Shown: in pieces, positions 29,701 through 42,689 of the stretch
Numbering within the stretch: the first letter of the stretch is position 1
Layout of the letters: the number at the start of each line of letters is the position of its first letter
IMG/VR virus record: IMGVR_UViG_3300042564_002819
Coordinates: 186,001-250,000 of that record
Strand: one strand, 5' to 3'
Length of the DNA: 64,000 bases
Translations under genes and position numbers: made by a program
Notes under the pieces: model-generated
Told to the model about the DNA's origin: nothing
Database searches by the model: none
The model's input: only the letters and a program-made list of their open reading frames with translations

Positions 29701-29876
29701 TGGCATTCCTCTAGATTATAGTGTTCACAGTCAGCAAGGTACTCAGGATCCAATTGGGAAGCTAGGAAATTTTCGTGTGCAGCCCGGTCGGCCAATGCTT
29801 CGGCCGGTGAAGTTAATACAGGTACGTCGCCACAAGCAGCTAACGTCAGTGCGGAAATCAACATCATCCACTTCAT
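29697..29876 (-). CDS. small lipoprotein
   Basis: MKWMMLISALTLAAC lipobox; own promoter. Confidence 0.55.
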   Translation of the reverse strand: MKWMMLISALTLAACGDVPVLTSPAEALADRAAHENFLASQLDPEYLADCEHYNLEECQ

Positions 29877-29939
29877 CTGCAGGGCCCTTTCTCTTGCTCT
29901 GTATCTTTTTATAGCATCAAGCGACACTGAGGTCAACCA

Positions 29940-30308
29940 TTACCAGACGTGAATAGAAAGACTTTCTGTGTTGTGTTTCCAGTTCATTTCTTTGCCGCCT
30001 GCTGATTCAATGCTTTTGCGGAATGCCGTGCTGTCACGACGGCTCTTAAGCACATACCGTTGAACTTTGACTTCGGTGTGTGCAGGACGACGCTTGGTTG
30101 CAGGACGTGCAGTTTCATAGACTGCACCGTAGCTGGCAAAGTAGTCCTTGACACAGTCAACAACAGCGGCTACGGCTGTTTGGTGTGCAAACGATCCAAA
30201 CACATCCGGATGACGGTCCATGGCTGCTTCTGCACGACGATTGATGTCTTCGATAGCAAACCAACTGGAGCCGACACTGTGTGTCTCTTTGGTTTCTTCC
30301 TTAATCAT
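29940..30308 (-). CDS. hypothetical protein
   Basis: AGGAG SD. Confidence 0.55.
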   Translation of the reverse strand: MIKEETKETHSVGSSWFAIEDINRRAEAAMDRHPDVFGSFAHQTAVAAVVDCVKDYFASYGAVYETARPATKRRPAHTEVKVQRYVLKSRRDSTAFRKSIESAGGKEMNWKHNTESLSIHVW

Positions 30309-30588
30309 AGTAATCTCCTACTAAGATGTATGTTGCAGGTGCACATTCTTCATTATCATTAGCATAGAGCAATCCGTCCTCGCGGTCAAGGAAAAAGTCC
30401 TTGCTTTCAGGATCGATATCATCTACATCAACGAATTCAACCTGGCCGAGATAGGCAAAATCGTCGAGGCACCCGCAGCTTTGAACAAAGCGATACACTC
30501 CAGGCTTATCAACAGTCTTGCCGATAATATCACTGGCTTCTCTCTGCGAGAATTCGTTGAGGTAGTCGATGCTGACTTTAATCATCAC
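30301..30588 (-). CDS. acidic hypothetical protein
   Basis: Coupled ORF. Confidence 0.55.
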   Translation of the reverse strand: MMIKVSIDYLNEFSQREASDIIGKTVDKPGVYRFVQSCGCLDDFAYLGQVEFVDVDDIDPESKDFFLDREDGLLYANDNEECAPATYILVGDYYD

Positions 30589-30728
30589 AGCTCTCCCTTG
30601 CGATGCTTTTGTTTGCGGGTGTATTTGGTTTTGTCACGCACAGTGCGGACGCGGAACTGAGGTGTGGCAAGTTCACGTGCAACAGGGTTGCGACGCTGAA
30701 TGTCTTCTGCACGGATTTGGATTTTCAT
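30585..30728 (-). CDS. ArfA-like small basic protein (47 aa)
   Basis: NPVARELATPQFRVR...KYTRKQKH; GAGGAG SD; own promoter. Confidence 0.55.
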   Translation of the reverse strand: MKIQIRAEDIQRRNPVARELATPQFRVRTVRDKTKYTRKQKHRKGEL

Positions 30729-30773
30729 CGTGTTGCTCCTCGTTTGCCCTATACCGTTTATATAGCATTGAGT

Positions 30774-30980
30774 TCAGTTGGTGTCAACCATTATCTTCTC
30801 AAGTTCGTCGACGTGATACATATAGCGTTGGCGAGTCTTGAACCTTTTATCAAGCCGCACACGAAGCCAACCTTCAACAAAGCCTTCATCTTCAACAGTG
30901 CCCAACAGGCCCTGGGTGGGACGAAGTGCTGGAGCACGGACCTTCACACGGTCTCCAATTTGGATTGTCATCTCTTTCAA
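30774..30980 (-). CDS. small SH3-like protein
   Basis: IGDRVKV...GTV...VRLD. Confidence 0.45.
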   Translation of the reverse strand: MKEMTIQIGDRVKVRAPALRPTQGLLGTVEDEGFVEGWLRVRLDKRFKTRQRYMYHVDELEKIMVDTN

Positions 30981-30983
30981 CCT

Positions 30984-31241
30984 CTATTTGAACTCTACTC
31001 TAACCAAATCGCCTTGTGGATTGAACATGGTGCAGACTCTGTTGCCCACCGCCTTGACAGTGGTACGAGTTTGCCACCACAGTTCGGCTTCTGCCTCAGT
31101 GTCTACCAACACCGCATTCCACTCCAACGGTCCACCAGGATTATCTGCTGGTGGTTTGGAGAACTGTGTTCTTACTTGCCACATCTGAATTCTCCGTGTT
31201 GCCCTATGCTCGGTTATAGCATAGGGCAAGGGTGGTGTCAA
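30984..31241 (-). CDS. hypothetical protein (true start may be downstream)
   Basis: ORF; a promoter lies within its annotated 5' part. Confidence 0.45.
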   Translation of the reverse strand: MTPPLPYAITEHRATRRIQMWQVRTQFSKPPADNPGGPLEWNAVLVDTEAEAELWWQTRTTVKAVGNRVCTMFNPQGDLVRVEFK

Positions 31242-31825
31242 CCTCTGTCTGTGTAGAAGATGTGATTGTCGATACGCACCACACGTTCAAAACTCTTGGC
31301 CCAAGTGGGCTTGACAGATGCAGCGTGGAAGTAGGTCGCTCCCTCAGTGGGATCACGTTCTACTCCGTATGACTGTAGGACTTCTTCTGCAACGACTTGT
31401 GCAGTTGCCCAAGCGGCTTGGTCCTTAGGTCTATCGCTCTTGCCATCGTGTGTCCAGGAGAACTGTTGATCTTCCCACACTACAGCACAGATGGTATCGG
31501 GGAAGTCCGAGTCCATTACTCTGTTGAGTGTAACCCAGCCTACAAACTCCTGTCCTACCTTGCTCTCGCCACGAGATTCAAAATAGACATTCAGTGCTAG
31601 GCAGTGTCGGTCTTCTTTGCTGACCTCAGCAAAGATGGCTTCGGGATCAGGGCGTGGCTGCATAGGTACAGGCACATGAACAATCCGTTCTACCACTCTG
31701 TCGATATACACTACTTCTTTGGGTTCGACGGCCGCTTTTGCCTCATCTGCCGTCAAGTAAACCACTGCCATTGCAACGATCACGGCTGAAGAAGCAACGC
31801 CGCCGATGATGGTACTCATCCTCAT
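31238..31825 (-). CDS. cell wall hydrolase (SleB/Hydrolase_2 family)
   Basis: CLALNVYFESRGE, V.LNRV, FP.TIC.VV, QFSW, GATYFH, I.NHIFY; N-terminal anchor. Confidence 0.9.
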   Translation of the reverse strand: MRMSTIIGGVASSAVIVAMAVVYLTADEAKAAVEPKEVVYIDRVVERIVHVPVPMQPRPDPEAIFAEVSKEDRHCLALNVYFESRGESKVGQEFVGWVTLNRVMDSDFPDTICAVVWEDQQFSWTHDGKSDRPKDQAAWATAQVVAEEVLQSYGVERDPTEGATYFHAASVKPTWAKSFERVVRIDNHIFYTDRG

Positions 31826-31947
31826 TGGATTCTCCTTTTTGTCGTTCGTGTAATAGTTATACTGGTATTGCTCGGAGTAGTCAACGTATATAATAGGAGT
31901 CAGCGAGATCTTGCTGGTTCCTAAGCAGGTTCTTGCTTAGCCTAGAA

Positions 31948-32406
31948 TCAGAAGTTAGGCTCGTAGTCACCGAACTCTTTATGCGTCAGCATCACTTGTT
32001 TATACAGTTGCGCCGCAGTAAGCCCACGATGCAGTCGTGCTAGACGGCTCATCGCAACTTGAATACGCTCGTCTGTGGGCTCTACAAAGCCGTCGTCGTC
32101 CGCTGCTACAGCCGTCTGTGCAGGCTTTACAGCACGTTCTTTGGCTGCTTTAGGCTTAGGTGCAGCGGCAGGCTCTCGGGCTGCTACACGCTGCAACAGT
32201 GCTCGTGCATCAGGTGTGCAAAAGGGCGACTCCAGCAAGTGTGCAGCGGCTGCCTCTCGAGTCATTGCAGTGGGCAGCTGGATCAACTGGATGTCAGTGT
32301 TCTCGCAGCGTTCCAGCATAGCAATACGACCCGCAAGATCGTTTGCAACACGGAACTTAAGCTCACCATTTTCCTTGCTAGTGCCAGCAACAGTGAAAGT
32401 CTTCAT
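31948..32406 (-). CDS. phage protein, paralog of 33678..34145
   Basis: TFTVAG.S..NG..K.R.AN...R..ML......I....LP.AMT..AA..HL. Confidence 0.65.
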   Translation of the reverse strand: MKTFTVAGTSKENGELKFRVANDLAGRIAMLERCENTDIQLIQLPTAMTREAAAAHLLESPFCTPDARALLQRVAAREPAAAPKPKAAKERAVKPAQTAVAADDDGFVEPTDERIQVAMSRLARLHRGLTAAQLYKQVMLTHKEFGDYEPNF

Positions 32407-32417
32407 CTTGCATCTCC

Positions 32418-32540
32418 TTAGTCTGCATACTGAGCGTTGAACAATGCTGCCTTGAAGGTGCCACCGTGAACAATCTTGTTGTCTGCTAGGCGTTTGCCGA
32501 ACCAAACATTACCTGCATTCCAGAACGTCCAACCTTCCAT
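32418..32540 (-). CDS. small hypothetical protein (40 aa)
   Basis: RBS block identical to that of the next gene; own promoter. Confidence 0.45.
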   Translation of the reverse strand: MEGWTFWNAGNVWFGKRLADNKIVHGGTFKAALFNAQYAD

Positions 32541-32641
32541 CTTGCATCTCCTTGCGTTATGCACTGTGTATAGCAGAATCTTTCTGCCAGTGCAAGAGAA
32601 TAATTCCTCTTGATCCGGTGAGTTGTTTGTGTTATACAACT

Positions 32642-32745
32642 TGTGAGGCCGGAGAGTTCCGTACGGGAGGGCACGGAGCCCTGAACCTATGGTTTAATCA
32701 TTAAACCATTCAGTCAAGGGGAAAGGGTGCATTGCTGCACCCTTG
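32642..32745 (+). ncRNA. candidate small structured RNA, copy 1
   Basis: TTGATC-N17-TATACA promoter, GTGAGGCC start, CTGAACCTATGGTTTAATCATTAAACCA hairpin, terminator-like stem 32722-32743; related copy at 41020. Confidence 0.45.
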
Positions 32746-32752
32746 TTCTCGT

Positions 32753-33022
32753 TCACATCTGCCAATAAGCTTCGCTTGCGGGCGACATGTAGTTGGGCGT
32801 ATTCACCGACTCCATGTATGACTGTCCAGTCATCAAGTTAGTGCGTTCTACTTGACGCTCGATGTTGTCTTGGAAGTAGGTGTATTCAGCAACCGCATAG
32901 TCGTTCCAGTTCAGGTAGCGTGTCACATGACGCTTTGCTGCCTGCTCAGTTGCAAAGAACTCGTCGCCGTTTGCACGACGTGCGGTACGAGTAGTATCTT
33001 TACGGTAAACCACATAAGCCAT
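32753..33022 (-). CDS. phage hypothetical protein
   Basis: AAGGAG SD; NLMTG..Y.E..NTP....P.SE.YW C-terminus. Confidence 0.65.
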   Translation of the reverse strand: MAYVVYRKDTTRTARRANGDEFFATEQAAKRHVTRYLNWNDYAVAEYTYFQDNIERQVERTNLMTGQSYMESVNTPNYMSPASEAYWQM

Positions 33023-33084
33023 TGTGTCTCTCCTTGTTGCTTACAGTTACACAATATAGAAAAAGCGATAAGGGGTCAAGCCCC

Positions 33085-33588
33085 TTATTTCCACTCTTGT
33101 CCATCGGCACGGAGTGCAACAATACTGTCCATTGCGAACGTGCGGATAACAACCTTGTTCTCAAGTCCGCCTTGCTCGCCTTCACGCTTTTCCGGAAGAC
33201 CATCGATTGCCGATTCGTCAACCGGTTTTCCGTCGAGCAGGTATTGCACGTCGCCAGCACGGAGGAAGATTACTTCCAAGTAATGAGTACCTTTGTGTTC
33301 CACAAACGGCGTGCCTGCAATACGCTCGCCCCATGCACGAGGGCTGAGTTCAAAGCCGGCAGGGTCCTTGCCTTCTTGCTCCAAACGACGCAGCACCATT
33401 GCGTTATATGCACTGCCGTTGGTGTTGCTGAAGCACATAACAGTGGCACCAGTCATTGCCTTTGTAACACGGCCCTGCTGCGGGTTCTTCTTGCCACCTT
33501 TGAGCACAACCGAAGTCACAGTGTCCATGCCAACGAACGTGCCGCCTGCAAGTGTGTCGAACGCAGTCTTTACAGTTTGGAAGTCCAT
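33085..33588 (-). CDS. phage hypothetical protein
   Basis: AAGGA SD; own promoter. Confidence 0.65.
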   Translation of the reverse strand: MDFQTVKTAFDTLAGGTFVGMDTVTSVVLKGGKKNPQQGRVTKAMTGATVMCFSNTNGSAYNAMVLRRLEQEGKDPAGFELSPRAWGERIAGTPFVEHKGTHYLEVIFLRAGDVQYLLDGKPVDESAIDGLPEKREGEQGGLENKVVIRTFAMDSIVALRADGQEWK

Positions 33589-33677
33589 TGCGTAGTCCTT
33601 TCTGTTTGTCTATGCTCTAGTTATAGCACCTAAGAGAAAGCGGTGCAAGCGTTATTTTGCCTGTACCGCCATTTTTT

Positions 33678-34145
33678 TTAGGCAGCAACTTCGGTCTGCT
33701 CAGCAGCCTTTGCAGCAATACGAGCAGCCAGTTTGGCTTTCTGCTCTGCCTTCTTTGCAAGCGTTTCAGCAATCAGCTGATCCAGCAACGCTTGACGAGC
33801 TTCTTTGGAAAGGAACTTGCCGCCTTCGCCGTGCGTCGGAATTTCAGCAATGGTGGGCAGCTTCATCGGACGGCCACGCTTGCCAGCAGCCTTCGGAGCA
33901 TTCTTCTCAACGTAGGCTTCCAGTGCAGCCATCGCAAGTTCGGTTTGGAAAGCGGGCAGCGTCTTAAGGTGTGCCACAGCCGCCAGCTTGGTCATAGCTT
34001 CGGGCAGCTCAACGATCGCAATGTTCTCGTGGCCGGTGTATTCAAGCATATACAAACGAGTGTCAAAGCCATTGCTGAAGCGAGCTTTGGTCTTGCCGTT
34101 CAAAGTCGAAACGCCAGCAACAGTGTAGGTCTTGGTGTTGGTCAT
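33678..34145 (-). CDS. phage protein with Lys/Ala-rich tail and GRP (AT-hook-like) motif, paralog of 31948..32406
   Basis: Shared N-terminal domain; KRGRP. Confidence 0.65.
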   Translation of the reverse strand: MTNTKTYTVAGVSTLNGKTKARFSNGFDTRLYMLEYTGHENIAIVELPEAMTKLAAVAHLKTLPAFQTELAMAALEAYVEKNAPKAAGKRGRPMKLPTIAEIPTHGEGGKFLSKEARQALLDQLIAETLAKKAEQKAKLAARIAAKAAEQTEVAA

Positions 34146-34353
34146 TTTACAGTTCCTTTGTGTGTGTTTGTGTGTGTTTCTGTTGTTTAGTATTAGCATC
34201 ATTGCTAACACAAGTCTAGTTCTTTTTTTAGGCAGCCTGCAATTTTTTTGCGTCTTGCTTGCTGTCTATGTGTTGTTTATAGTTCCTATCGTTGTGTGTT
34301 GCAACCGAAAAGTTGTCTATATCTAAACTTTTTTTCGGTTGCATCTTTTTCTA

Positions 34354-34827
34354 TTACCAGCTAGAACAGTAATAAAATTCCCAATGTTTGGTAATCTCCT
34401 CGTTGCCAAGGATCTCTTCCAGGCCCTTTACAGTGTCTTCCAGGTCCCGCCAGTAATACTCGTCGTATTCAGTGCCGCCAAAGAAAAAGCCGCTTTGGGT
34501 AGGCAACAGTGCTTGGGCATTGGCAATTGCATTAGGGCCGTTGCGGCCTGCAAGAACAGAACGGCAAGTATTCAGCAGTTCGTTCAGCTGTTCATCAGAA
34601 ACGAAAGTCTCTTGACATTCGTCTTTGCCTTCCTGCACGTTATCAACGAACCATTTGTGGATCTGGTTCGACTTGCGCCAATACATCATCTCGCAGCTGA
34701 CTTCTTTGATGCGGCGGCCTTTGAGCTCGGGGAACAGCGGCTCTACCGCAGCTTGGATGTGCTGGTCCGGGCTGTCAGAGAAGCCCCAGATATAGCGACG
34801 TCCGGTAAGATACATATCAAGTCCCAT
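34354..34827 (-). CDS. phage protein (MGLDMY...YWRK.N.IH.WF)
   Basis: GAGGA SD; own promoter. Confidence 0.65.
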   Translation of the reverse strand: MGLDMYLTGRRYIWGFSDSPDQHIQAAVEPLFPELKGRRIKEVSCEMMYWRKSNQIHKWFVDNVQEGKDECQETFVSDEQLNELLNTCRSVLAGRNGPNAIANAQALLPTQSGFFFGGTEYDEYYWRDLEDTVKGLEEILGNEEITKHWEFYYCSSW

Positions 34828-34900
34828 GTGCATCCTCTTTTGCTGTTTGTGTTTACAAGTTAGCAGAATCAAAAAGCATGGTCAACCTAATAAATGAAAA

Positions 34901-34932
34901 TGCCCTAGCAGGGAGGGCATCCTGCTAGGGCA
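34901..34932 (-). terminator. intrinsic terminator-like hairpin
   Basis: TGCCCTAGCAGG/CCTGCTAGGGCA 12-bp stem followed by a T-run on the minus strand. Confidence 0.5.
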
Positions 34933-35056
34933 GTAAGCGAAGCGTTGAGAGGGCACCAACAACTTCGAAAGTGACAGGTTGACGAGGGCAGTCTTCCTGT
35001 CTTATACGCCCGAACAATGAGGGCAACTGCCCGGGCGACTTGACCGTAGTGCGGAG

Positions 35057-36055
35057 TTAGACTCGACGCATTACGGTGTTCTCTGCTATAGCTTCCCAAT
35101 CGTTCGGGAAAGCCTGGGCCAGATCTGCAACCTTAAGAACGGTTCGCAAGCTGAGCTCACGCAGTCGTTCACGGTTCTGATCCACAAACTCAACCACATC
35201 ATCTTTGATCTCGTCTGTGAGTTTGTAGTCATTGAGCATACCGTCACCAACCAATTGACGAATACGCAACATCTTTTCACGATCAGTATCGATGGTCAAG
35301 TCAATATAATGACAGCGTGATTCCAATGCAGTCAAGTGTTCACGCAGACGTCCACGCACCTTGCTGAACTTGATGTTGGTGATAAAGATCGCAGAACCTT
35401 CAAAGCGGAACGAATCCGGAATACCTTCTTCACGCAGCTTGCGGCTATCCGAGTTCCAGTGCAGTGTCCTGGTTTTCTTCGAATCCAGTGCAGCTTTGAG
35501 CAGGTTCAACGACGTTTCGTCTGTGAAGATGCTGTCGCAGTCATCGAACACAACCACACAGTCTTTGTCTGCATACTTGTAGAGCTTGCAATAAAGACCC
35601 AGCGGGCTTACAGCACCTTTGATCACTTCGTACTTCTTAGCACCGCCCATGTCTTCCAAAAGCTTGTGCCGATCCAGAACTTCTTCTACACCGTAGCTTT
35701 TGCCAACACCTGGAGGTCCTGACACGATCATTGCTCGCACATCACCACGCTTAACAGCTTTGGTCATTTCGGTAAGCATGTTAAAGCGGCTACGCATACG
35801 ATCAACAATCTCTTCGTCGGTTTCCTCGACCGTAACAGCGGGGCCTTCTGCGTCAGCAACTTCGACGCTTTCAGGTCCTGACACATATACCTTGATTGCA
35901 CGATCCGGAAAGCCCGGAACAGCTTTACCATTTACCATTACGTACCCACCACGAACTCCAACTCGGTAGCCACCGACCAACGGCATAACCTGGTTGGTCA
36001 TGTCAAAGTCTTTGCCACGAAGTTTAAATGTTCCTTCCAGAAATTTTACCTGCAT
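35057..36055 (-). CDS. AAA+ ATPase
   Basis: GPPGVGKS Walker A, VVVFDDCD Walker B, ALESR arginine finger. Confidence 0.85.
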   Translation of the reverse strand: MQVKFLEGTFKLRGKDFDMTNQVMPLVGGYRVGVRGGYVMVNGKAVPGFPDRAIKVYVSGPESVEVADAEGPAVTVEETDEEIVDRMRSRFNMLTEMTKAVKRGDVRAMIVSGPPGVGKSYGVEEVLDRHKLLEDMGGAKKYEVIKGAVSPLGLYCKLYKYADKDCVVVFDDCDSIFTDETSLNLLKAALDSKKTRTLHWNSDSRKLREEGIPDSFRFEGSAIFITNIKFSKVRGRLREHLTALESRCHYIDLTIDTDREKMLRIRQLVGDGMLNDYKLTDEIKDDVVEFVDQNRERLRELSLRTVLKVADLAQAFPNDWEAIAENTVMRRV

Positions 36056-36108
36056 GTTTGCCCTCTTCTTGTTCTTGCAGTTTACTAGTACACAGACCAG
36101 TTGTCAAC

Positions 36109-36285
36109 CTAAAGTTTCAGCGTTGTGAAGTGTAGGAATATCCCAAGAACGGCCAGAACGATCGCAATAGCAACCGGCGTATTGATCACAGCCCAAAGCT
36201 GCTTAACCAACCACAGTGCTACACTCAAACCTACTAGGCCGACCAAGATCAGCAGTATTAGTGTTTGAATATCTTCTGAAGTCAT
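36109..36285 (-). CDS. small two-helix membrane protein
   Basis: Two hydrophobic segments; AAGGAG SD. Confidence 0.5.
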   Translation of the reverse strand: MTSEDIQTLILLILVGLVGLSVALWLVKQLWAVINTPVAIAIVLAVLGIFLHFTTLKL

Positions 36286-36343
36286 TGGAACTCTCCTTAT
36301 ACTCCAACTTAACACAAACGCTCTACAGTGTCAACGAAAAAAA

Positions 36344-36420
36344 TGGTAGCCCCTGCAGGACTCGAACCTGCGACCCACCGCTTAGAAGGCGGTTGCTCTG
36401 ATCCGCTGAGCTAAGGAGCC
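36344..36420 (-). tRNA. tRNA-Arg(TCT)
   Basis: Cloverleaf; ACCGC-CTTCTAA-GCGGT anticodon arm; GTTCGA; encoded CCA. Confidence 0.92.
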
Positions 36421-36464
36421 ATTATTGTATCTTAAGCTGAGCTACGGAACCAGCAAAAGAAGTT

Positions 36465-36541
36465 TGGTAGGGGATACCGGACTTGAACCGATAACCTGCG
36501 GATTATGAGTCCGACGCTCTAACCAATTGAGCTAATCCCCC
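36465..36541 (-). tRNA. tRNA with CAT anticodon (Ile2 or elongator Met)
   Basis: CGGA-CTCATAA-TCCG; GTTCAA; CCA; lacks initiator GGG/CCC stem. Confidence 0.88.
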
Positions 36542-36548
36542 GAAACTT

Positions 36549-36630
36549 TGGTACCCGCTGCCGGACTCGAACCGGCACGCACTAGCGGGAGATTTTAAGT
36601 CTCCTGTGTCTACCATTCCACCAAGCGGGC
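36549..36630 (-). tRNA. tRNA-Leu(TAA)
   Basis: GGAGA-CTTAAAA-TCTCC; variable arm; GTTCGA; CCA. Confidence 0.92.
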
Positions 36631-36649
36631 ATCTCTTATTTATACTGGC

Positions 36650-36850
36650 TTAGACAGGCCAGTTGTCAAACTCAACACCACGTCCGACTGTAACGCTCAT
36701 GTCAACCATGCTGATGTCACGCATCAGATTGATCGCAACCTCTTCGTGCCGGCGATGCAACACAGTTGCAAGTCGTTCACGATCACCTTCGCTAAGATTA
36801 GCAATAGATTCAGCTACTTGTTCGACAACGGTTTTCACGTTCTGCTCCAT
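36650..36850 (-). CDS. hypothetical protein
   Basis: ORF directly after TTGACA-N17-TAAGAT promoter. Confidence 0.45.
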   Translation of the reverse strand: MEQNVKTVVEQVAESIANLSEGDRERLATVLHRRHEEVAINLMRDISMVDMSVTVGRGVEFDNWPV

Positions 36851-36887
36851 TTGTTATACAGTATCTTAACACTTTTGTCTGTGAGTG

Positions 36888-37178
36888 TCAACCGGTAATT
36901 GACAGTTCTTTTACCGGTTGCAACAGGCTTGCGTGGACCTTCCACACCGTAGCAGCGTTGCTCTGGCGCACTTGAATGGTCTTGATGTTGACTTTGGTCA
37001 CAGTGCCAACGACCTGCATCCCGCGAGCAGCAAAGCTAACACGGTCGCCTACTTGGAACGTAGCAGTCTTTTGACGTGCAAGGTAAGTGCGACGCAGCTT
37101 GATCGCTTCAACAACACGGTTGAGTTCGTCGTTGTCCATCTTGTGAATCGCAGTGACGGCAGTTGCAAAGTTGTTCAT
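36888..37178 (-). CDS. phage protein with SH3-like C-terminus
   Basis: VGDRVSF...GTVTKVN.KT....W.V..SLL; GAGG SD. Confidence 0.6.
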   Translation of the reverse strand: MNNFATAVTAIHKMDNDELNRVVEAIKLRRTYLARQKTATFQVGDRVSFAARGMQVVGTVTKVNIKTIQVRQSNAATVWKVHASLLQPVKELSITG

Positions 37179-37317
37179 CTTGTGGTCCTCTTGTTGCCCT
37201 ATGTGTTACTTGTAGCACCAATAGACAGGCTCGTCAACAGGAATCTCTTCATCTTCTTCTGCTTGCTTGAGCAGATGCTGTTCAAACTCCAGATATTCTT
37301 CCAGTGTCAAATCCATA

Positions 37318-37506
37318 TTATTTCTTCACCCGCACATAAGCTTTGCCAAAGAACGCAGTGAGCACAACCACAGCCAACCAGTTCCAGAAGGTGTAAGCGA
37401 TAGCAAAGCCGAACAGCGTGTTCACAGCCCAGATCGCAGCCAAGGGCCACAGTATGATCCAGGTAATCAGGAACACGACAATTCCGGCCTTGGTTAGATT
37501 TTTCAT
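37318..37506 (-). CDS. small membrane protein
   Basis: IWAVNTLF..I.YT...WLA; AGGAG SD. Confidence 0.6.
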   Translation of the reverse strand: MKNLTKAGIVVFLITWIILWPLAAIWAVNTLFGFAIAYTFWNWLAVVVLTAFFGKAYVRVKK

Positions 37507-37516
37507 TTCACTTCTC

Positions 37517-37723
37517 CTATTTGACAAAGTATTCACGACGGCTACCTGCGCCATCTGTTTGATTTGTAGGCAGATAACTGAAGCCTGCATAGCGTCCAGC
37601 TTCAAACAATACTGCTTCGATCATGCCGCAAACCGATTCGCGACCATCCGCAGTGCTGCTATCACTGGCAAGATAACTATTTGCACACTTCAGCACAAAT
37701 TCGACATCAACAGTTTTACGCAT
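37517..37723 (-). CDS. hypothetical protein
   Basis: AGGAGG SD; own promoter. Confidence 0.6.
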   Translation of the reverse strand: MRKTVDVEFVLKCANSYLASDSSTADGRESVCGMIEAVLFEAGRYAGFSYLPTNQTDGAGSRREYFVK

Positions 37724-37790
37724 CTTTGCAGCCCTCCTATTGCCCTATGCCGTGTTATAGCATAGGGCATGATTCGGTGTCAACCAGTTA

Positions 37791-38204
37791 TTAGTCTTCT
37801 TCTGTTTCAGTTTCCAGTGCAGTAGAAAGTTCGTAGATGCCGTTGTAGGTGTGAACTTGCCAGACAGCACCAGGAGTGAACAGGTAGTCGTATTCTTGCC
37901 CGTGTTCTGCACGGAACTGACGCCAGTTGTGCTCAGTGCAAGCATCAACATTATGCTCGCCGCGATCACGCCCGTATGCATTGCACTCGCCATCGGGAGC
38001 CGCATCAAAGTCGTGGGCAGTGCCAATCTCAGCACCAAGCGACGAAATGTTGCCAAGAGCAATCAGTTCACGCACCTTGGCTTCGTCAGCGTAGTGGTCT
38101 TGCAGGATTTGACCGTTGTGGCTGAGGTAGCCGTCCCAGTGGCAGTAGATGCCAGAGACAGTGCCGTCAGCGTTCTGGATTGCAATAGTCGAACGAGTTC
38201 CCAT
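37791..38204 (-). CDS. phage protein (MGTRS...YCHWDGY)
   Basis: GAGGG SD; own promoter. Confidence 0.65.
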   Translation of the reverse strand: MGTRSTIAIQNADGTVSGIYCHWDGYLSHNGQILQDHYADEAKVRELIALGNISSLGAEIGTAHDFDAAPDGECNAYGRDRGEHNVDACTEHNWRQFRAEHGQEYDYLFTPGAVWQVHTYNGIYELSTALETETEED

Positions 38205-38257
38205 TGTGTGTATCCCTCTACACAGTGTTGCGTTGTGTGTTAGTTATATGACAAGCC

Positions 38258-38539
38258 TTACGGCTTGTCAACCTTTTCCGGAAACATTGCTGCGACTTTT
38301 TCAACGCCAGCAGCAGTCAGATACAGCACACGATTGCGGGTAGCAGTCTCAACATACACGCAGCCAGCATCGTCGCCGCGGCCCTGGTTCCAAGTCTGCA
38401 GACGCATATCCGGGTTCTTCAGCAGTTGCGTTATAGCCCGTTTGCGAGCCAGCTCACCTTCGTTATAGTTGCCATTGCAGCCACACATGCAGCCAGGACG
38501 ACCCGAGTAAGCACGAACAGTATCCATAACAGTCAGCAT
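38258..38539 (-). CDS. hypothetical protein (YSG..GC.CGC.G.Y motif)
   Basis: GAGGG SD; own promoter. Confidence 0.6.
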   Translation of the reverse strand: MLTVMDTVRAYSGRPGCMCGCNGNYNEGELARKRAITQLLKNPDMRLQTWNQGRGDDAGCVYVETATRNRVLYLTAAGVEKVAAMFPEKVDKP

Positions 38540-38590
38540 CTTGTTTCCCTCTTCGTTGCTGTCTATGTGTTAGTTATAGCAATCATTGAC

Positions 38591-38989
38591 TCAAGCGTCA
38601 ACCACTTTCTCCATCTCAGCGAGCAGATTTTTCAGAGCAGCGATACGCTCTTGCGTAGGGAAGAAGCGACCCGAGTAGCTGTAGCCATCATTGAGTTCTT
38701 TCTCCATAGCACGAGCAATCCGCACCTGCTCCTTGCGACGAGCTTCACTGTCCTGGATGCTACGCAGTTTGGCGGCATGCATCAAGCTAGGACCATAATC
38801 GTCCTTGTATGCTGCGCCACGCTTGTTGAACACGAACTCACGATCATCGCTCTGGACAAAGATGTGCCCATGTCCGTTGATCTTAGTCACAGTGCCAAAG
38901 CGGGCAGTCAACAGCGTTCCGCTGTTGCGATGCTGCCGAGCAATACCAACTGTTTCACCAACTGCGGTAACGAAATCACCGTATGCCAT
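38591..38989 (-). CDS. hypothetical protein
   Basis: GAGGG SD; own promoter. Confidence 0.6.
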   Translation of the reverse strand: MAYGDFVTAVGETVGIARQHRNSGTLLTARFGTVTKINGHGHIFVQSDDREFVFNKRGAAYKDDYGPSLMHAAKLRSIQDSEARRKEQVRIARAMEKELNDGYSYSGRFFPTQERIAALKNLLAEMEKVVDA

Positions 38990-39054
38990 AGCGTGTATCC
39001 CTCTCTGCTATGTTTCTGTCTATGTGTTAGTTATAGCACCAGTACCAAGTGCTG

Positions 39055-39249
39055 TCAAGCAATCTTTTCGCCAGTGCGTAGATTGTATACAAAGCAGATA
39101 CCGCCCAGGGCATCACGAACTTTGATAACGTCGTAGAAGCCCTGCTCCTTCATCAATTGGTGAGCAATTTTGCCTTCAGCGGCGTTGTAAACTGTGGTTA
39201 CAAAAGTCTCAACTTGATTGCGGATGCCATAAACAGAATAGGAACGCAT
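39055..39249 (-). CDS. hypothetical protein
   Basis: GGAG SD; own promoter. Confidence 0.55.
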   Translation of the reverse strand: MRSYSVYGIRNQVETFVTTVYNAAEGKIAHQLMKEQGFYDVIKVRDALGGICFVYNLRTGEKIA

Positions 39250-39314
39250 AGCCTGTCTCCGTTGTGTTGCTCTACTCCAATACACTAGCATCAGAGTAGA
39301 GCCGTGTCAACCAG

Positions 39315-39782
39315 TTAGGCAAAAGTATAATTTTCTTCTGCTACACCGTTCACAGTGCCGTCCAACGAGCGACCAGTGCAGACATAAGGCCGGTTCCATT
39401 TGCCCACATTGATGTGCAGGTAGTAGGCTGTGTCGAAGTAGTCCGTCATGATGTCCGAACGATCATACCACAGGTTGCCACACATAGCAGCAGTCAGTTC
39501 GCGGAAGAACTGACCAACAGTATTGTCTGCATATTGATCCGGACGATAGGCGTTGGCCTGGTAGTAGTCCTTAACTTCGTGGAAACGCTGTCCGGTGCGT
39601 TCTGCATATTCACGATTGAAACGGTTTGCTTCGCCAATCAGATCCAGCTTGCCAGACTTGATTGTAACAACCAGACTGGAATAGTTATCTACTGAAATGG
39701 ACCCTTTCATGCCATACCGCTTGAACACGGCTTTGATAGCCGGTGCCAACTGTGCCTTCTGCTCTTGATTCATGTAAGCCAT
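39315..39782 (-). CDS. phage protein, LPD29-like C-terminal D.MTDYFD motif
   Basis: SDIMTDYFDTAYY; GAGGG SD; own promoter. Confidence 0.55.
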   Translation of the reverse strand: MAYMNQEQKAQLAPAIKAVFKRYGMKGSISVDNYSSLVVTIKSGKLDLIGEANRFNREYAERTGQRFHEVKDYYQANAYRPDQYADNTVGQFFRELTAAMCGNLWYDRSDIMTDYFDTAYYLHINVGKWNRPYVCTGRSLDGTVNGVAEENYTFA

Positions 39783-39846
39783 AACCGTTATCCCTCTTTG
39801 CTCGGTTGCGTCTATGTTCTAATTATAGCACCAGCTGACAGTGCTG

Positions 39847-40026
39847 TCAACAGATTTCAACACCTTCTGAGTTGGCAAAGTCAGTAAACTCGTCTGCTAT
39901 GTTGTTCAGCTGGTTGTGGAACTCGTAGCAGGCAGCAGGATGCCGCTCGCCCAGCAACGATTGCTGAATTGCATCTGCTTCATCCAGCAGGTCGATCAAC
40001 CGCTGCCATTTTTCTTGTTGGGTCAT
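39847..40026 (-). CDS. small acidic protein
   Basis: GGAGG SD; own promoter. Confidence 0.55.
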   Translation of the reverse strand: MTQQEKWQRLIDLLDEADAIQQSLLGERHPAACYEFHNQLNNIADEFTDFANSEGVEIC

Positions 40027-40090
40027 TGTTTCCTCCATTGTGTTGCCCTACTCCACATACATAGCATGTAGAGCAGGGCAGGTCAACCAG

Positions 40091-40330
40091 TTAGTAGATG
40101 AAATCCAACTCGCCGCGGATCACAGAGATCAGGTCGTAACCGTCACGGCTAGGCATATACTCTGCAATCTCTTCCGCACTCCAGTCGCTGTGATCGCACT
40201 CAGCAGCATAGGCAAGGTCTGCCCACTCGTTGGTATCCATTTGACGTGCATCAACTGCATCGCCCAACTCAACCAACGTGACCATATAGTCGTCGTCTTG
40301 GCCACGCCAGATAACAGTATACAGAGCCAT
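40091..40330 (-). CDS. highly acidic small protein
   Basis: ~19 D/E in 79 aa; GAGGAG SD. Confidence 0.6.
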   Translation of the reverse strand: MALYTVIWRGQDDDYMVTLVELGDAVDARQMDTNEWADLAYAAECDHSDWSAEEIAEYMPSRDGYDLISVIRGELDFIY

Positions 40331-40473
40331 TATTCTGTCTCCTCATATGCACCAGCTTCGATGTCAGCTTCGATTTCGTCTGCAATACCACGCAGGATCA
40401 TTACAATTTCCTGAGGATCCAGATTGCCTTCATTCAGCAAGTGCTCCACAGTCGCTTGCAGCATCGTGTCCAT
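40330..40473 (-). CDS. small acidic protein (47 aa)
   Basis: AAGGAG SD; TAATG coupling; below ORF-track cutoff. Confidence 0.5.
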   Translation of the reverse strand: MDTMLQATVEHLLNEGNLDPQEIVMILRGIADEIEADIEAGAYEETE

Positions 40474-40534
40474 TGTTTGCTCCTTGTTGCCCTACTCCAC
40501 ATACATAGCACATGGAGCAGGGCAGGTCAACAGT

Positions 40535-40903
40535 TTATTCAGGAAATTCCAAACGCAGTCGATCCTGCAAACGACGAACTTCTTGACGAGCTTGATCCAC
40601 GGCTTCTGCAAGCATGTCTTCAAGATAACCACCAATGCCCGACTCAATGTCATCAGCAGGATCACAGTTCACAGCATAGCAAGATCCCAACGACTCAGAT
40701 CCTACAAGATGCCCTGCATAGAACACTCGAACTCGTGCGATGTAATGAGTGTCAATGCCACGATTGCAACGATCAATCATGCTGTCGAGATCTGATACAG
40801 TCTCATCAAAGCAATCGCCTAATGCAGCCTGTTCGTAGGTCCAGTCTACAGTTACATCAAACTGATCCTTGCGGAAACGCTTGGCTTCGTAGTAATGGTT
40901 CAC
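40535..40903 (-). CDS. acidic hypothetical protein
   Basis: GGAGGG SD, GTG start; own promoter. Confidence 0.6.
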   Translation of the reverse strand: MNHYYEAKRFRKDQFDVTVDWTYEQAALGDCFDETVSDLDSMIDRCNRGIDTHYIARVRVFYAGHLVGSESLGSCYAVNCDPADDIESGIGGYLEDMLAEAVDQARQEVRRLQDRLRLEFPE

Positions 40904-41019
40904 AGTGTCCCTCCAGTGTTGCCCTATATCCAGACAATATAATACTGCCTACAGTGTGTCAACTGGAAAAAACTTTCAAAATCAGTATTGACCACAAGAA
41001 CAGAATTTGCTATACAACA

Positions 41020-41112
41020 AGTGAGGCCAGGAAAGGTTCACGGACATGAACTGAGTAGGGAACGCGAGGGTCGCCGAAATCTGAACCTACGGTTTAATGA
41101 TTAAACCATACA
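41020..41112 (+). ncRNA. candidate small structured RNA, copy 2
   Basis: TTGACC-N17-TATACA promoter; GTGAGGCC start; CTGAACCTACGGTTTAATGATTAAACCA hairpin. Confidence 0.45.
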
Positions 41113-41298
41113 ACCACCAAGTGTATAGTTGAACAGTAAACCACCCAGACTGAGATGGTTTAACGTTAAACTATCAAAGTGAATCCACCGAGATAACACC
41201 ACCACCACGGCCACCACCACAGTGGCCAAATCATACAAAATGAAATTCCGGTTTTCGAAATGAGATTAACCTTCCGTACGGTGGTTATCGGGACGCCG

Positions 41299-41364
41299 TA
41301 CGGGGCCGTATGACGTGTCGTTTGAGGCCGTTTGACGTGTCGTTTGAGGCCATATGACGTGGTT
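41299..41364. repeat. 22-bp tandem repeat (about 2.7 copies) and right arm of 19-bp inverted repeat
   Basis: GGCCGTATGACGTGTCGTTTGA units at 41304, 41326, 41348. Confidence 0.85.
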
Positions 41365-41690
41365 TTGAAAGGAAAAATTTTAAAGGTCCAAAATCTTATA
41401 TAAGAATTTTTTCGGTTGAGGCAGGTGATGAGAGGCATAGTGTAAATACTCTCGCCTCATCTTTTGTTTTTTCTCACCTTTCGGTTTTCTCACCCCATGT
41501 TCACGGTTCTATTCTCACAAACAGTTCTTCTATTCTATACAAGTGTTTGATATTGTTAAGTTTTCTTTACAGTATAAAAGATTGACATTTATCTTTAAAT
41601 CGTTTATATTAGCGTTATTGATACAGTCTGTTCTAGCAGGATTCGTACCGTAACGCAGTTGCAGTCTGTATTATCTTTTATGATTGTTCT

Positions 41691-41882
41691 ATGATAGTAT
41701 GCCAATGTAATAAGCTCACAACAGATCAGATAGTCACAGCTATTCGATCAATATCATCAGCTGGATCACAGCCTACTCCACAGTCTGTGGTTTCTCATTT
41801 GGGTTGCAGTTTCGATTGTGCCAACGATGTGCCATTGATATTGGGTATAACCAAAACGATACAGCGGGGCCGCACTGTATAG
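41691..41882 (+). CDS. bacterioferritin-associated ferredoxin (Bfd)-like protein
   Basis: MIVC.CN...I..AI...LGC..DC; fourth Cys appears replaced by Asp. Confidence 0.65.
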   Translation: MIVCQCNKLTTDQIVTAIRSISSAGSQPTPQSVVSHLGCSFDCANDVPLILGITKTIQRGRTV

Positions 41883-42031
41883 CGTAGTAGCTATAAAATA
41901 ATTTTAACCTTGAACAGTAACAGCGGGGCCACACTGCGGCTATATACTATTATGTATAGCGTAGATCAAATAGTCGCTGTTGCTATCTTTGTTATGATTC
42001 TTTTAACTGTGTGTATAGGGATCTCTGTATA

Positions 42032-42322
42032 GTGTATCTCTATATCATCTGTGACAGTTCAGAGTCGGTAGTAAAGATCGGATACAGTCGTGATCCGGAT
42101 TCTCGTTTACGATCATTACAAACAGGTCATCCTCTACCATTGCGTGTATATCATAGTGTATTGGTTTCAGAGGATCGTGTGCGTTTATTAGAGCGTCAGT
42201 TACATGCGGAGATGAATCACTATAGAACTCGCGGGGAGTGGTTTCGTATACCAGCAGGTCAGGCTCGTTTGTTATTAGATCACTGTGTAATACGTTGGTC
42301 GGATGATCCTCTGCTGGAGTAA
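42032..42322 (+). CDS. GIY-YIG (T5orf172/MUG113-like) nuclease family protein
   Basis: YLYII...VKIGYS.DP..RL..LQTG.P...E..LH...GEWF. Confidence 0.8.
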   Translation: MYLYIICDSSESVVKIGYSRDPDSRLRSLQTGHPLPLRVYHSVLVSEDRVRLLERQLHAEMNHYRTRGEWFRIPAGQARLLLDHCVIRWSDDPLLE

Positions 42323-42380
42323 CAGCGGGGCCTTTAGATCCGTTTGTTTTAATAAATATCTAAAACAATTGAGACAGTGA

Positions 42381-42689
42381 ATGGCATTTACACAGACCAC
42401 ATTAGACATCACTTCGGTGGAGATATTTACTGCTGACCGTACAGTAGCGATCACAGCATTATATTTGGTCAACACCAGCAGCAGTGCAGTCACGGTCACA
42501 GTGTATCTGGTTCCACCTGCTGGGTCGGCCAGTTCCAATCGAATAGTTTATTCAAACCTAAACTGTAATTCTGATGAAACAGTTGCAGTGCTCACAGAGC
42601 GTATAGTATTAACTGCTGGGGATAGTATCTGGGCTGAGTGTAGCAGTCAGTTTGCTGTGGTAGCCACTGTAGCAAGTGTAGCAGTATAA
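42381..42689 (+). CDS. small beta-rich late protein, probably structural
   Basis: ATAAATA upstream; T/V/S-rich. Confidence 0.5.
   Translation: MAFTQTTLDITSVEIFTADRTVAITALYLVNTSSSAVTVTVYLVPPAGSASSNRIVYSNLNCNSDETVAVLTERIVLTAGDSIWAECSSQFAVVATVASVAV

What the first reader, a model, noticed from the sequence alone, without database searches (positions are those of the whole stretch)
32610..41112. Two related promoter-driven small RNA candidates oriented against the early genes
At 32610-32745 and 40988-41112 a plus-strand sigma70 promoter (TTGA.C-N17-TATACA) is followed by GTGAGGCC, a variable hairpin-forming middle and CTGAACCTAYGGTTTAATSATTAAACCAT. Neither has a credible ORF. A third similar palindrome (GATGGTTTAACGTTAAACTATC) lies at ~41155. 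I do not recognise the family. It could be a regulatory sRNA, an anti-defence decoy RNA, a replication primer or a protein operator.
Basis: partly seen in the sequence, partly recalled or inferred. Interest (0 to 1): 0.65.

Follow-up and report, generated by a model that had tools for sequence, protein, structure and literature searches.

The report
New early small RNA of lake phages
The two sites are copies of a previously undescribed small structured RNA gene that a group of large freshwater phages places behind a host-type early promoter, usually just before a row of short DNA palindromes; its function is unknown and it has not yet been seen as RNA.

Summary
Units A (32610-32755) and B (40988-41109) are the only two copies in a 330-kb jumbo-phage genome. 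I found about 20 distinct homologues in lake, river and estuary phage contigs. All have a sigma70-type promoter whose -10 ends 4-6 nt before a conserved 5' UGAGG. The RNA body has a hairpin (P1) whose stem covaries, with 5 of 6 pairs changed on both sides in B-type units. A conserved hairpin (P2) has the loop ACGGA. All 17 one-sided changes give G.U on the + strand and none gives A.C. Homology between diverged relatives starts at the predicted start site and stops at the end of the first palindrome. No Rfam family matches and no ORF is conserved.

The palindrome is a separable module. Two relatives have the RNA with a U-tail and no palindrome. Most relatives have 4-12 palindromes at 29-30 bp spacing after the RNA, and these look like DNA protein sites. 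One relative has promoter plus array with a different RNA.

Best reading: a new early, host-polymerase-made small RNA family acting in trans, probably as a decoy resembling early-mRNA leaders. Expression is untested because no public RNA run holds the sequence.

The parts
32610..32638 (+). Unit A promoter: -35 TTGATC (32610-32615), 17-nt spacer, extended -10 TG (32630-32631), -10 TATACA (32633-32638)
   Evidence: Read. The same layout is kept in all 18 distinct homologues, with the -10 ending 4-6 nt before UGAGG.
32643..32709 (+). Unit A RNA body. 5' GUGAGG at 32643-32648. P1 CGGA-GAGU-UCCG at 32650-32661. P2 AGGGC-ACGGA-GCCCU at 32668-32682. Linker GAACCU. P3 palindrome hairpin at 32689-32709.
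   Evidence: folds. P1 pairs covary (A-U to U-A and G-C; G-C to C-G) and P2 varies G-C to G.U. The covariance model scores it at 74.5 bits.
32723..32755 (.). Hairpin AAGGGTGCATTGCTGCACCCTT plus the tail GTTCTCGTT. It is the likely 3' end of RNA A (about 110 nt). It lies directly after the stop of the convergent gene 32753-33022 (-), so it may terminate both directions.
   Evidence: Terminator-like site on +. RNA A including this hairpin folds with z = -3.4 and -2.6. The tail is only moderately T-rich, and less so in the strain variant L016.
32567..32595 (-). Back-to-back early promoter for the leftward genes next to unit A: TTGCAC (32595..32590), N17, TATACA (32572..32567). It leads to the ATG at 32540.
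   Evidence: Read. Strong Shine-Dalgarno sites and starts are listed.
40988..41016 (+). Unit B promoter: -35 TTGACC (40988-40993), 17-nt spacer ending TGC, -10 TATACA (41011-41016). A-tracts lie upstream.
   Evidence: It has the same class layout as the early gene promoters TTGAC(A/C)-N14-TGC-TAT....
41021..41109 (+). Unit B RNA body. 5' GUGAGG at 41021-41026. P1 GGUUCA-CGGACA-UGAACU at 41035-41052. GUAGG at 41055-41059 pairs with CCUAC at 41086-41090. GCGA-GGG-UCGC at 41064-41074. P3 palindrome hairpin at 41089-41109.
   Evidence: P1 has 5 of 6 pairs changed on both sides, the whole structure is 96% paired against 23-41% when slid, and 0 of 500 shuffles reach it. Covariance model 91 bits. Contigs of other strains align from 41019 to 41109 only.
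41157..41172 (.). Second palindrome GGTTTAACGTTAAACT. It is the remnant of the array, which has 4-12 copies at 29-30 bp spacing in relatives.
   Evidence: Array length polymorphism is seen at 41109-41258 in other strains.
41110..41260 (+). Tract downstream of unit B with C above G, including CCACCACC runs. No intrinsic terminator on +.
   Evidence: in relatives the 120 nt after the array hold C 36-51 against G 11-21, with one exception (L029, C 27: G 32). The window has C 33: G 23. One search finds no + terminator between 41112 and 41690.
40934..40962 (-). Divergent early promoter TTGACA-N17-TATTGT. Its leader TAGGGCAAC lies at 40926..40918 and leads to the GTG start at 40903 of the first leftward early gene.

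Best explanation
Each unit is a gene for a small structured non-coding RNA of a new family. It is made early in infection by the host sigma70 RNA polymerase.

How it is built:
- Transcription starts at the purine(s) 5-7 nt after the -10, giving 5'-(A/G)UGAGG.
- The RNA folds into a variable hairpin P1, which differs between three unit types.
- A conserved hairpin P2 follows, AGGGC-ACGGA-GCYCU. B-type units instead have GCGA-GGG-UCGC enclosed by GUAGG/CCUAY.
- Long forms end in a 9-10-bp A/U-rich hairpin P3, which is the first palindrome.

How it ends:
- RNA A ends at the hairpin 32723-32744 and is about 110 nt long.
- RNA B has no intrinsic terminator. I infer that it ends in the C-rich, G-poor tract by Rho, or at protein bound to the palindromes, and is trimmed back to P3 (about 90 nt).

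Origin and action:
- The units appear derived from the phage's own early promoter-plus-leader cassettes.
- They keep purine-rich Shine-Dalgarno-like motifs: 5' GAGG, GGGAGGG, and GUAGGGAAC..GAGGG.
- The most likely action is therefore in trans, as a decoy for a factor that recognises early-mRNA leaders or SD-like motifs. That factor could be a translational repressor, a nuclease or the 30S subunit.
- The further palindromes behind the RNA gene are most likely DNA sites for a dimeric protein that blocks or insulates rightward read-through.

Shown: sequence family, promoter conservation, strand-specific structure conservation, and separability of RNA and palindromes.
Inferred: transcription itself, the 3' ends, the decoy action, and the role of the array.
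For: Family:
- A metagenome and IMG/VR pattern scan plus the covariance model gave about 20 distinct homologues.
- Every source holds one copy, except the window and L016 (two dispersed copies) and L010 (two in tandem).

Promoter:
- All 18 distinct units tabulated have TTGnnn, N16-18 and TAnnnT/A. Eleven have the extended -10 TG.
- The -10 ends 4-6 nt before UGAGG while spacer sequences differ.
- It is the same class as the early-gene promoters.

Structure:
- The P1 stem covaries around the fixed loop CGGACA. Variants include GGUUCA/UGAACU, GGUGUG/CGCACC, GCACCG/CGGAGC, GCAAGG/CUUUGC and GAUCAG/CUGAUU.
- P1 of the short forms and the GAUA hairpin of type 3 also covary.
- 17 one-sided changes give G.U on the + strand and none gives A.C.

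The RNA stands alone:
- L043 and L046 have promoter, UGAGG, P1, P2 and U5-6, with no palindrome.
- The 101-kb record of L043 has no such palindrome anywhere.

Boundaries:
- Contigs of other strains match the window only from 41019 to 41109.
- Summed contig depth there is 158 against 17-35 beside it.

Other points:
- No conserved ORF and no Rfam match.
- Leader resemblance is shown.
- The transcribed strand downstream is C-rich and G-poor.
Against: - There is no expression evidence. No RNA run holds the stretch.
- Folding energies of the bodies alone are not better than shuffles, with z from +0.4 to -1.6.
- TATACA is a weak -10 hexamer.
- The alignments hold few independent lineages. P2 and P3 show wobble changes but almost no double changes.
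- The decoy mechanism is only an inference. GGA motifs are not enriched over dinucleotide shuffles, 36 observed against 33.9 expected, P = 0.35.
- Neither the binding partner nor the host is known.
- In the close strain L016, unit B carries several changes in the 'invariant' linker and palindrome. Unit B may therefore be decaying in this lineage.
Confidence: 0.68

Rival explanations
1. Purely DNA-level element. The conserved block and the palindromes are binding sites (operator, iteron or centromere-like array) for a dimeric DNA-binding protein, and any transcript is incidental.
For: - Relatives carry 4-12 palindromes at 29-30 bp spacing with invariant half-sites GTTTAA/TTAAAC.
- At the outer array position the pairs are mixed: GC 28, GT 10, AC 8, AT 3. 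There is no strand-consistent wobble.
- Copy number differs between near-identical contigs, 12 against 8.
- The 16-mer is 12/16 identical to the canonical parS site (own knowledge).
- Similar palindrome pairs sit over a promoter in Enterococcus.
Against: - It cannot explain stem covariation with fixed loops, nor wobble pairs that fit the + strand only.
- It cannot explain the promoter kept at a fixed distance.
- It cannot explain RNA-only members with U-tails.
- No ParB_N or HTH_ParB domain is found in the genome.
- It may still be true for the array part alone.
Confidence: 0.1
2. The RNA and the array are one transcribed anti-defence decoy: a strong early promoter drives a leader followed by a variable number of identical hairpins. 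These would titrate a host RNA-binding defence protein, in the manner of pseudo-ToxI repeats or RNA anti-CRISPRs.
For: - Arrays always lie 3' of the promoter in the same orientation.
- They occur nowhere else in the genomes searched.
- Spacers are C/U-rich and G-poor on the transcribed strand only, C 270: G 121.
- Copy number varies between close strains.
Against: - Array hairpins are weak, with 5-8 A/U-rich pairs.
- Many have A.C at the outer pair on the + strand.
- Spacers are not conserved, so the repeat is not a full ToxI-like unit.
- The 29-30 nt period is too short for a CRISPR repeat plus spacer.
- No ToxN was found in the phage, though that control search was uninformative.
- The window genome itself has only 1-2 hairpins.
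Confidence: 0.1
3. cis-acting leader on rightward transcription: a put- or nut-like antitermination RNA, or an attenuator, rather than a free small RNA.
For: - It lies immediately downstream of an early promoter.
- It has two stem-loops, one with a 5-bp stem and a pentaloop like boxB (own knowledge of lambda nut and HK022 put).
- In unit B the direction leads towards the + strand genes from 41691.
Against: - Unit A points into the 3' end of a convergent gene and has nothing to read.
- L043 and L046 end in a U-tract, and the next gene has its own promoter.
- In unit B-type loci, 0.5-1 kb of non-coding DNA with further promoters, such as 41582-41610, separates the unit from the genes.
Confidence: 0.06
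4. Replication origin: the promoter gives a primer or activating transcript that runs into iterons (the palindromes).
For: - It sits at the divergence point of leftward and rightward transcription, at a local minimum of cumulative GC skew.
- The array is iteron-like.
- A DnaB-type helicase and an AAA+ protein are encoded nearby.
Against: - Array size runs from 0 to 12 and the array is nearly lost in the window genome, so it is not essential.
- The transcript over the array would be C-rich and G-poor, which is unfavourable for a stable R-loop.
- Whole-genome skew does not single out this site.
- The skew minimum is explained by the switch of gene strand.
Confidence: 0.05

Closest known systems
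Phage lambda oop RNA and similar short phage-encoded sRNAs made by host RNA polymerase (own knowledge)
   Same: A short (50-110 nt) non-coding transcript from a sigma70 promoter in the early control region. It ends at a hairpin and is oriented against neighbouring genes, as unit A is.
   Different: No sequence or structure similarity. oop acts as an antisense to cII, whereas these units overlap no coding sequence if they terminate as predicted.
CsrB/RsmZ-type protein-sponge RNAs (own knowledge: A(N)GGA in hairpin loops)
   Same: The invariant loops ACGGA (P2) and CGGACA (P1) plus single-stranded AGGA or GGGA motifs resemble CsrA/RsmE sites. The decoy logic is the same.
   Different: GGA is not enriched over composition. 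There are only 1-4 motifs. The host and the presence of CsrA are unknown. No Rfam CsrB or Rsm model matches.
F plasmid sopC and ParB-parS centromere arrays (own knowledge)
   Same: Tandem repeats that each hold a 16-bp palindrome, with variable copy number. The palindrome is 12/16 identical to canonical parS.
   Different: No ParB-family gene in the genome. The period is 29-30 bp rather than 43 bp. The array is dispensable in several relatives.
Untranslated repeat region (iss) next to the pre-early genes of phage T5 (bioRxiv 10.1101/866236)
   Same: A conserved non-coding region of about 1 kb or more, full of direct repeats and palindromes, bordering a block of small early genes. The region is more conserved than the neighbouring ORFs.
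   Different: No DnaA-box pattern was looked for or seen. There is no evidence of terminal repeats or two-step injection here. T5 has no described promoter-driven structured RNA at that place.
HK022 put and lambda nut RNA elements (own knowledge)
   Same: Promoter-proximal stem-loops in early transcripts, including a 5-bp stem with a pentaloop.
   Different: Unit A and the short forms have no downstream genes to antiterminate, and the short forms themselves end in a terminator.
Pseudo-ToxI repeats of phage PhiTE (own knowledge)
   Same: A phage-borne tandem short repeat behind a promoter, with copy number that changes between close strains.
   Different: Only the palindromic core is conserved, not the whole repeat. 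No partner toxin is known.

Membership tests
Any Rfam 15 family | Score at or above the family's gathering threshold | tested here: not met
   The whole window at gathering threshold gave only 3 tRNAs. In E-value mode over both units the best hits had E 0.36-10 and were far below threshold.
Bacterial/phage sRNA gene (generic kind) | Own promoter at a fixed distance from the conserved RNA 5' end | tested here: met
   All 18 distinct units tabulated have -35 and -10 elements, with the -10 ending 4-6 nt before UGAGG.
Bacterial/phage sRNA gene (generic kind) | Secondary structure kept by compensatory changes on the transcribed strand | tested here: met
   P1 has 5 of 6 pairs with changes on both sides, and 0 of 500 shuffles reach the score. 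Searches agree. Wobble pairs fit the + strand only.
Bacterial/phage sRNA gene (generic kind) | Defined terminator | tested here: inconclusive
   Unit A has a hairpin with a moderately T-rich tail. L043 and L046 have P2 plus U5-6. Unit B-type units have none, only a C-rich, G-poor tract.
Bacterial/phage sRNA gene (generic kind) | Detected transcript | not testable with these tools
   All 24 runs that hold the sequence are DNA metagenomes.
CsrB/Rsm sponge RNAs | Many GGA motifs, enriched and presented in hairpin loops | tested here: not met
   36 GGA observed against 33.9 in dinucleotide shuffles, P = 0.35. Only one loop per unit carries GGA.
ParABS / sopC-type centromere | A ParB-family protein encoded with the array | tested here: not met
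   PF02195 and PF17762 are absent from the 330-kb genome, while the control genomes rang.
ParABS / sopC-type centromere | Tandem palindromic sites with conserved half-sites | tested here: met
   Relatives have 4-12 copies at 29-30 bp spacing. The window keeps only 2.
Type III antitoxin RNA (ToxI-like) | Tandem identical repeats of about 34-45 nt next to a ToxN-type endoribonuclease gene | tested here: inconclusive
   The period is 29-30 nt and the spacers vary. There was no ToxN hit, but the control genomes did not ring either.
CRISPR array / repeat mimic | Repeats of 23-47 nt separated by unique spacers of similar length | tested here: not met
   The repeat core is 16-21 bp with 8-14-bp spacers. 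Host repeats could not be compared because the host is unknown.
Iteron-type replication origin | An array that is indispensable and conserved in all relatives | tested here: not met
   The array is absent in L043, L046 and L047 and reduced to 2 sites in the window.

The most novel reading that the evidence does not exclude
The unit and the palindrome array together form a two-part early takeover module of a kind not yet described. The structured RNA would mimic the phage's own early-mRNA leaders (UAGGGCAAC...GAGGG) to draw off a host or phage factor that acts on those leaders. It would be coupled in cis to an expandable array of hairpins or protein sites that sets its 3' end and dosage. A variant of this reading is that the whole transcript is an RNA decoy against a host RNA-binding defence protein.
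Probability: 0.15. Interest if true: 0.8.

Novelty: new variant of a known kind. Interest (0 to 1): 0.6.

Why it matters
Very few small RNAs of virulent phages are known, and almost none for uncultured jumbo phages. This one has unusually good comparative support:
- The promoter is conserved at a fixed distance from the RNA 5' end.
- Hairpin stems covary.
- Wobble pairs fit one strand only.

It is widespread. The window's stretch containing both units is found in metagenomes from 22 lake and river studies. It sits at the control point between the early and the rightward gene blocks.

It gives a concrete, testable handle on early host takeover in a phage group where nearly all early proteins are of unknown function. 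It also links an RNA gene to an expandable array of palindromes, and the logic of that link is unexplained.

Tried and rejected
- blastn of both units against GenBank phages found no match.
- Rfam at gathering and at permissive thresholds found nothing.
- Protein-anchored searches for relatives with the two flanking genes found nothing. DNA pattern scans worked instead.
- The CsrA-sponge idea fails on statistics, because GGA is not enriched.
- Base-pairing targets in the phage were sought. Complements of the conserved single-stranded 9-mer and of the 5' end occur only by chance inside genes, none at a start site.
- No ParB-encoded partner for the palindromes is present. ToxN was not found, but the control was uninformative.
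- A co-occurrence test failed. The best-conserved early protein (137 aa, 37791-38204) is also present in the array-less relative, so it is not the palindrome binder by that test.
- Pfam, PHROG and NCBIfam scans of about 30 neighbouring proteins gave no DNA- or RNA-binding candidate. The AAA+ protein at 35057-36055 has no solved relative by sequence.
- Thermodynamic stability of the RNA bodies alone is not distinctive.
- A long-range helix predicted in type-3 units (GGUUGGU with ACUAGC) is not kept in L013, L017 or L028, so I rejected it by eye on alignment A6.
- The coding reading is rejected. A 27-codon frame from the 5' GUG in unit B is not kept in the other unit types.
- A Flavobacteriaceae host, suggested by the binning of L029, is rejected. 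The promoters are classical TTGACA/TATAAT and the genes use strong AAGGAG ribosome sites.
- The chimeric-assembly explanation for the GC-rich domain is rejected. Relatives are syntenic across the boundary.

Full report
CONTEXT

The window is bases 186001-250000 of a 330,024-bp IMG/VR virus record that CheckV estimates 93% complete, so this is a jumbo phage. The genome averages about 36% G+C. Window 21000-57000 is a G+C-rich domain, reaching 45-52% at 28000-41000.

From about 27000 to 40903 the genes are small, lie on the minus strand and have strong AAGGAG ribosome sites. Three tRNA genes lie at 36344-36630. Plus-strand genes begin at 41691. Almost all neighbouring proteins are of unknown function. 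A DnaB-type helicase, an AAA+ protein, a cell-wall hydrolase, a T5orf172 protein, an HNH endonuclease and virion proteins were recognised.

Unit A lies in the 212-bp gap between two minus-strand genes (32541-32752). Unit B lies at the head of the minus-strand block, in the 787-bp divergent intergenic region (40904-41690).

THE OBSERVATION

The long shared motifs occur exactly twice, where shuffles expect none. There are no further copies in the whole genome by pattern or by covariance model.

The -10 hexamer TATACA lacks the conserved last T, so the generic promoter scan does not list either promoter. Each unit also sits back to back with a minus-strand promoter for the next early gene. These are TTGCAC-N17-TATACA for A and TTGACA-N17-TATTGT for B.

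RELATIVES

GenBank phages hold nothing similar. Pattern scans of IMG/VR and of JGI metagenomes found about 20 distinct homologous units, and a covariance model confirmed them. They come from lake, river and estuary contigs. The longer contigs are syntenic with the window on both sides, so these are true relatives and the G+C-rich domain is not an assembly chimera.

The units fall into these forms:
- Type 1 is like unit B.
- Type 2 is like unit A.
- Type 3 has a GAUA-loop hairpin.
- A short form occurs in L043 and L046.

Unit A is an extra copy peculiar to some lineages. The orthologous gap in L012, L022 and L024 has no unit. L011 has an A-type unit, and L010 has an A-like and a B-type unit in tandem 178 nt apart.

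EVIDENCE THAT THE CONSERVED BLOCK IS AN RNA GENE

Promoter:
- In all 18 distinct units tabulated there is a TTGnnn, a 16-18-nt spacer of unrelated sequence and a TAnnn(T/A) hexamer.
- The hexamer ends 4-6 nt before an invariant UGAGG. Eleven units have the extended -10 TG.
- The layout TTGAC(A/C)-N14-TGC-TAT... is the same as that of the phage's early-gene promoters.
- A-tracts lie upstream of several units.

Covariation:
- In the B-type alignment, the hairpin with the fixed loop CGGACA has a different stem in nearly every lineage. Five of its six pairs change on both sides.
- The whole proposed structure is 96% paired, against 23-41% when the partners are slid by 1-3 columns. No shuffle out of 500 reaches its covariation score.
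- The corresponding hairpin of the A-type and short forms covaries too: CGGA/UCCG, CGGU/ACCG and CCGG/CUGG.
- So does the GAUA hairpin of type 3: GGC/GCC, GAC/GUC and AGCU/GGCU.

Strand:
- Every change on one side only turns G-C into G.U as read on the plus strand (17 cells). None produces A.C, which is what G.U on the minus strand would look like.

Boundaries:
- When contigs from four other metagenomes were laid on 39500-42500, foreign strains matched only from 41019 to 41109.
- Summed depth there is 158, against 17-35 beside it. This interval runs from the predicted start site to the end of the first palindrome.

Other points:
- No reading frame is kept. The unit types differ by indels of 22 and 5 nt.
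- L043 and L046 have promoter, UGAGG, P1 and P2 followed directly by U5-6, with no palindrome.
- The 101-kb record that holds L043 has no such palindrome at all.

Weak points:
- No RNA data exist for this sequence. All 24 holders are DNA runs.
- The folding energy of the bodies alone is not better than that of shuffles. Only RNA A including its terminal hairpin stands out, at z = -2.6 to -3.4.
- The number of independent lineages is small.

ANATOMY

The common plan is as follows:
1. 5'-(A/G)UGAGG(C/U/A).
2. A variable hairpin P1.
3. (U/A)ACG(G/A/C)GAGGG, with P2 = AGGGC-ACGGA-GCYCU.
4. GA(AC/CU)CUAU.
5. P3, the palindrome.

In B-type units GCGA-GGG-UCGC replaces P2, and GUAGG pairs with CCUAY. 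L029 has GUAGGG with CUCUAU, which again differs only by wobble pairs.

The 5' GAGG can alternatively pair with the CYCU that forms the 3' arm of P2 (fold of L029). The data cannot decide between these two pairings.

The 5' UGAGGC resembles the conserved start UAGGGCAAC of the early mRNAs. B-type units also carry an internal GUAGGGAACGCGAGGG that resembles the early leader UAGGGCAACACUGGAGGG. In L027 the same promoter position carries an ordinary-looking early leader in front of three palindromes. The units therefore look derived from early promoter-plus-leader cassettes.

THE PALINDROMES

In most relatives the first palindrome is followed by 4-12 further copies of (G/A)GTTTAA-N2-3-TTAAAC(C/T) at 29-30 bp spacing. 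Their properties are:
- Copy number differs between otherwise identical contigs, 12 against 8, and between strains of the window's phage.
- They occur nowhere else in the genomes searched.
- The half-sites never vary. At the outermost position both G..T (10) and A..C (8) occur, so the array copies show no RNA-like strand preference.
- As RNA they would be weak hairpins. I take them as DNA sites for a dimeric protein. No such protein was found.
- Spacers and the following 120 nt are C-rich and G-poor on the transcribed strand in nearly all relatives. That is what a Rho loading region looks like, and it argues against an R-loop primer.

The first palindrome differs from the array copies:
- It is longer, at 21 bp.
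- It has a 3-nt centre.
- It belongs to the conserved RNA block.
- Its few changes are G.U or A-U on the plus strand.

In the close strain L016, unit A is intact but the linker and palindrome of unit B carry several substitutions.

MECHANISM

Shown:
- This is a conserved, promoter-linked, strand-specifically structured element.
- It is separable from the palindromes.

Inferred:
- It is transcribed early by host polymerase.
- RNA A ends at 32723-32755.
- RNA B ends by Rho or a protein roadblock and is trimmed to P3.
- The RNA acts in trans. Because it imitates early-mRNA leaders and SD-like motifs, my best guess is a decoy for a factor acting on those leaders.

A specific CsrA-sponge version is not supported. 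No base-pairing target was found in the phage. The rivals are a DNA-only site, a transcribed hairpin decoy array, a cis-acting leader and an origin primer. They are weighed in the fields above.

COMPARISON AND NOVELTY

No Rfam family matches. The closest analogues are functional, not homologous:
- Short phage RNAs such as lambda oop.
- Sponge RNAs of the CsrB type.
- sopC/parS-type arrays, for the palindromes.
- The conserved untranslated repeat region beside the pre-early genes of T5, for the surroundings.

I file it as a new variant of a known kind, phage-encoded early small RNA. Its unusual and unexplained feature is the link to an expandable palindrome array.

Noticed in passing
window 27045, 31206, 37201, 40050, 40494, 40926 (minus strand); also genome 293505 and 293923 (+), outside the window: The early genes share one promoter and leader cassette: (G)TTGAC(A/C)-N14-TGC-TAT(A/G)nn, then 6-7 nt, then the conserved transcript start TAGGGCAAC(A), a GGAG/GAGG ribosome site and ATG. 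The invariant leader start suggests a factor that recognises it. The sRNA units use the same promoter class.
   Followed up: partly
window 21000-57000: A G+C-rich domain of 42-52%, peaking at 28000-41000, inside a genome of about 36% G+C. It covers the early block and the start of the structural genes. Relatives are syntenic across it, so it is not a chimera.
   Followed up: partly
window 41274-41362: Direct repeats CCGTACGG (x2) and TGACGTGTCGTTTGAGGCC (x2), then ATGACGTGG. The same repeat type (GACGTGTCG, or its complement in some relatives) is kept at the equivalent place in L003, L004, L012, L026 and L029. It is probably a second protein-binding site set.
   Followed up: no
window about 41455-41490: A conserved non-coding block, GAGG...GAGAGGCATAGTGTAAATACT, is also present in L003, L004 and L012 just before the rightward genes. 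Its function is unknown.
   Followed up: no
L004, L012, L020, L026 and L027, intergenic region after the array: Several copies of AATGACTTA and its complement TAAGTCATTGA lie in relatives. Some are followed about 19 bp later by TATAAA or TATAGT. They may be a second promoter class or activator boxes. The window genome lacks most of them.
   Followed up: no
L008 versus L009; window 41109-41258 in run X19: The palindrome array changes copy number between near-identical contigs (12 against 8). It is replaced or shortened in co-occurring strains.
   Followed up: partly
L016:3930-4021 (strain about 95% identical to the window): Unit B of this close strain has CTAGACC in place of CTGAACC and a degraded palindrome (GGTTTACGGATTAAACT), while its unit A is intact. 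Unit B may be decaying where a second copy exists.
   Followed up: partly
L029 (RFXU01000450.1, 1115 bp): A contig carrying a B-type unit and array is binned in a Flavobacteriaceae MAG. The promoter type and strong Shine-Dalgarno use argue that this is phage DNA mis-binned, not a host clue.
   Followed up: partly
L030:777-821 and L031:4984-5029 (Enterococcus): Two GTTTAACGTTAAAC palindromes 29-30 bp apart lie immediately downstream of a TTGACA -35-like box, ahead of a ribosome-binding site and ATG, in two Enterococcus genomes. They are unrelated loci, but they show this palindrome type used as a bacterial operator pair.
   Followed up: no
window 36344-36630 (-): A tRNA cluster (Arg-TCT, Met-CAT, Leu-TAA) sits inside the early block and is conserved in relatives L004, L022 and L024.
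   Followed up: no
window 32418-32540 and 31948-32406 (-): Two consecutive early genes start with the identical context AAGGAGATGCAAGATG. This suggests a local duplication of the start region beside unit A.
   Followed up: no
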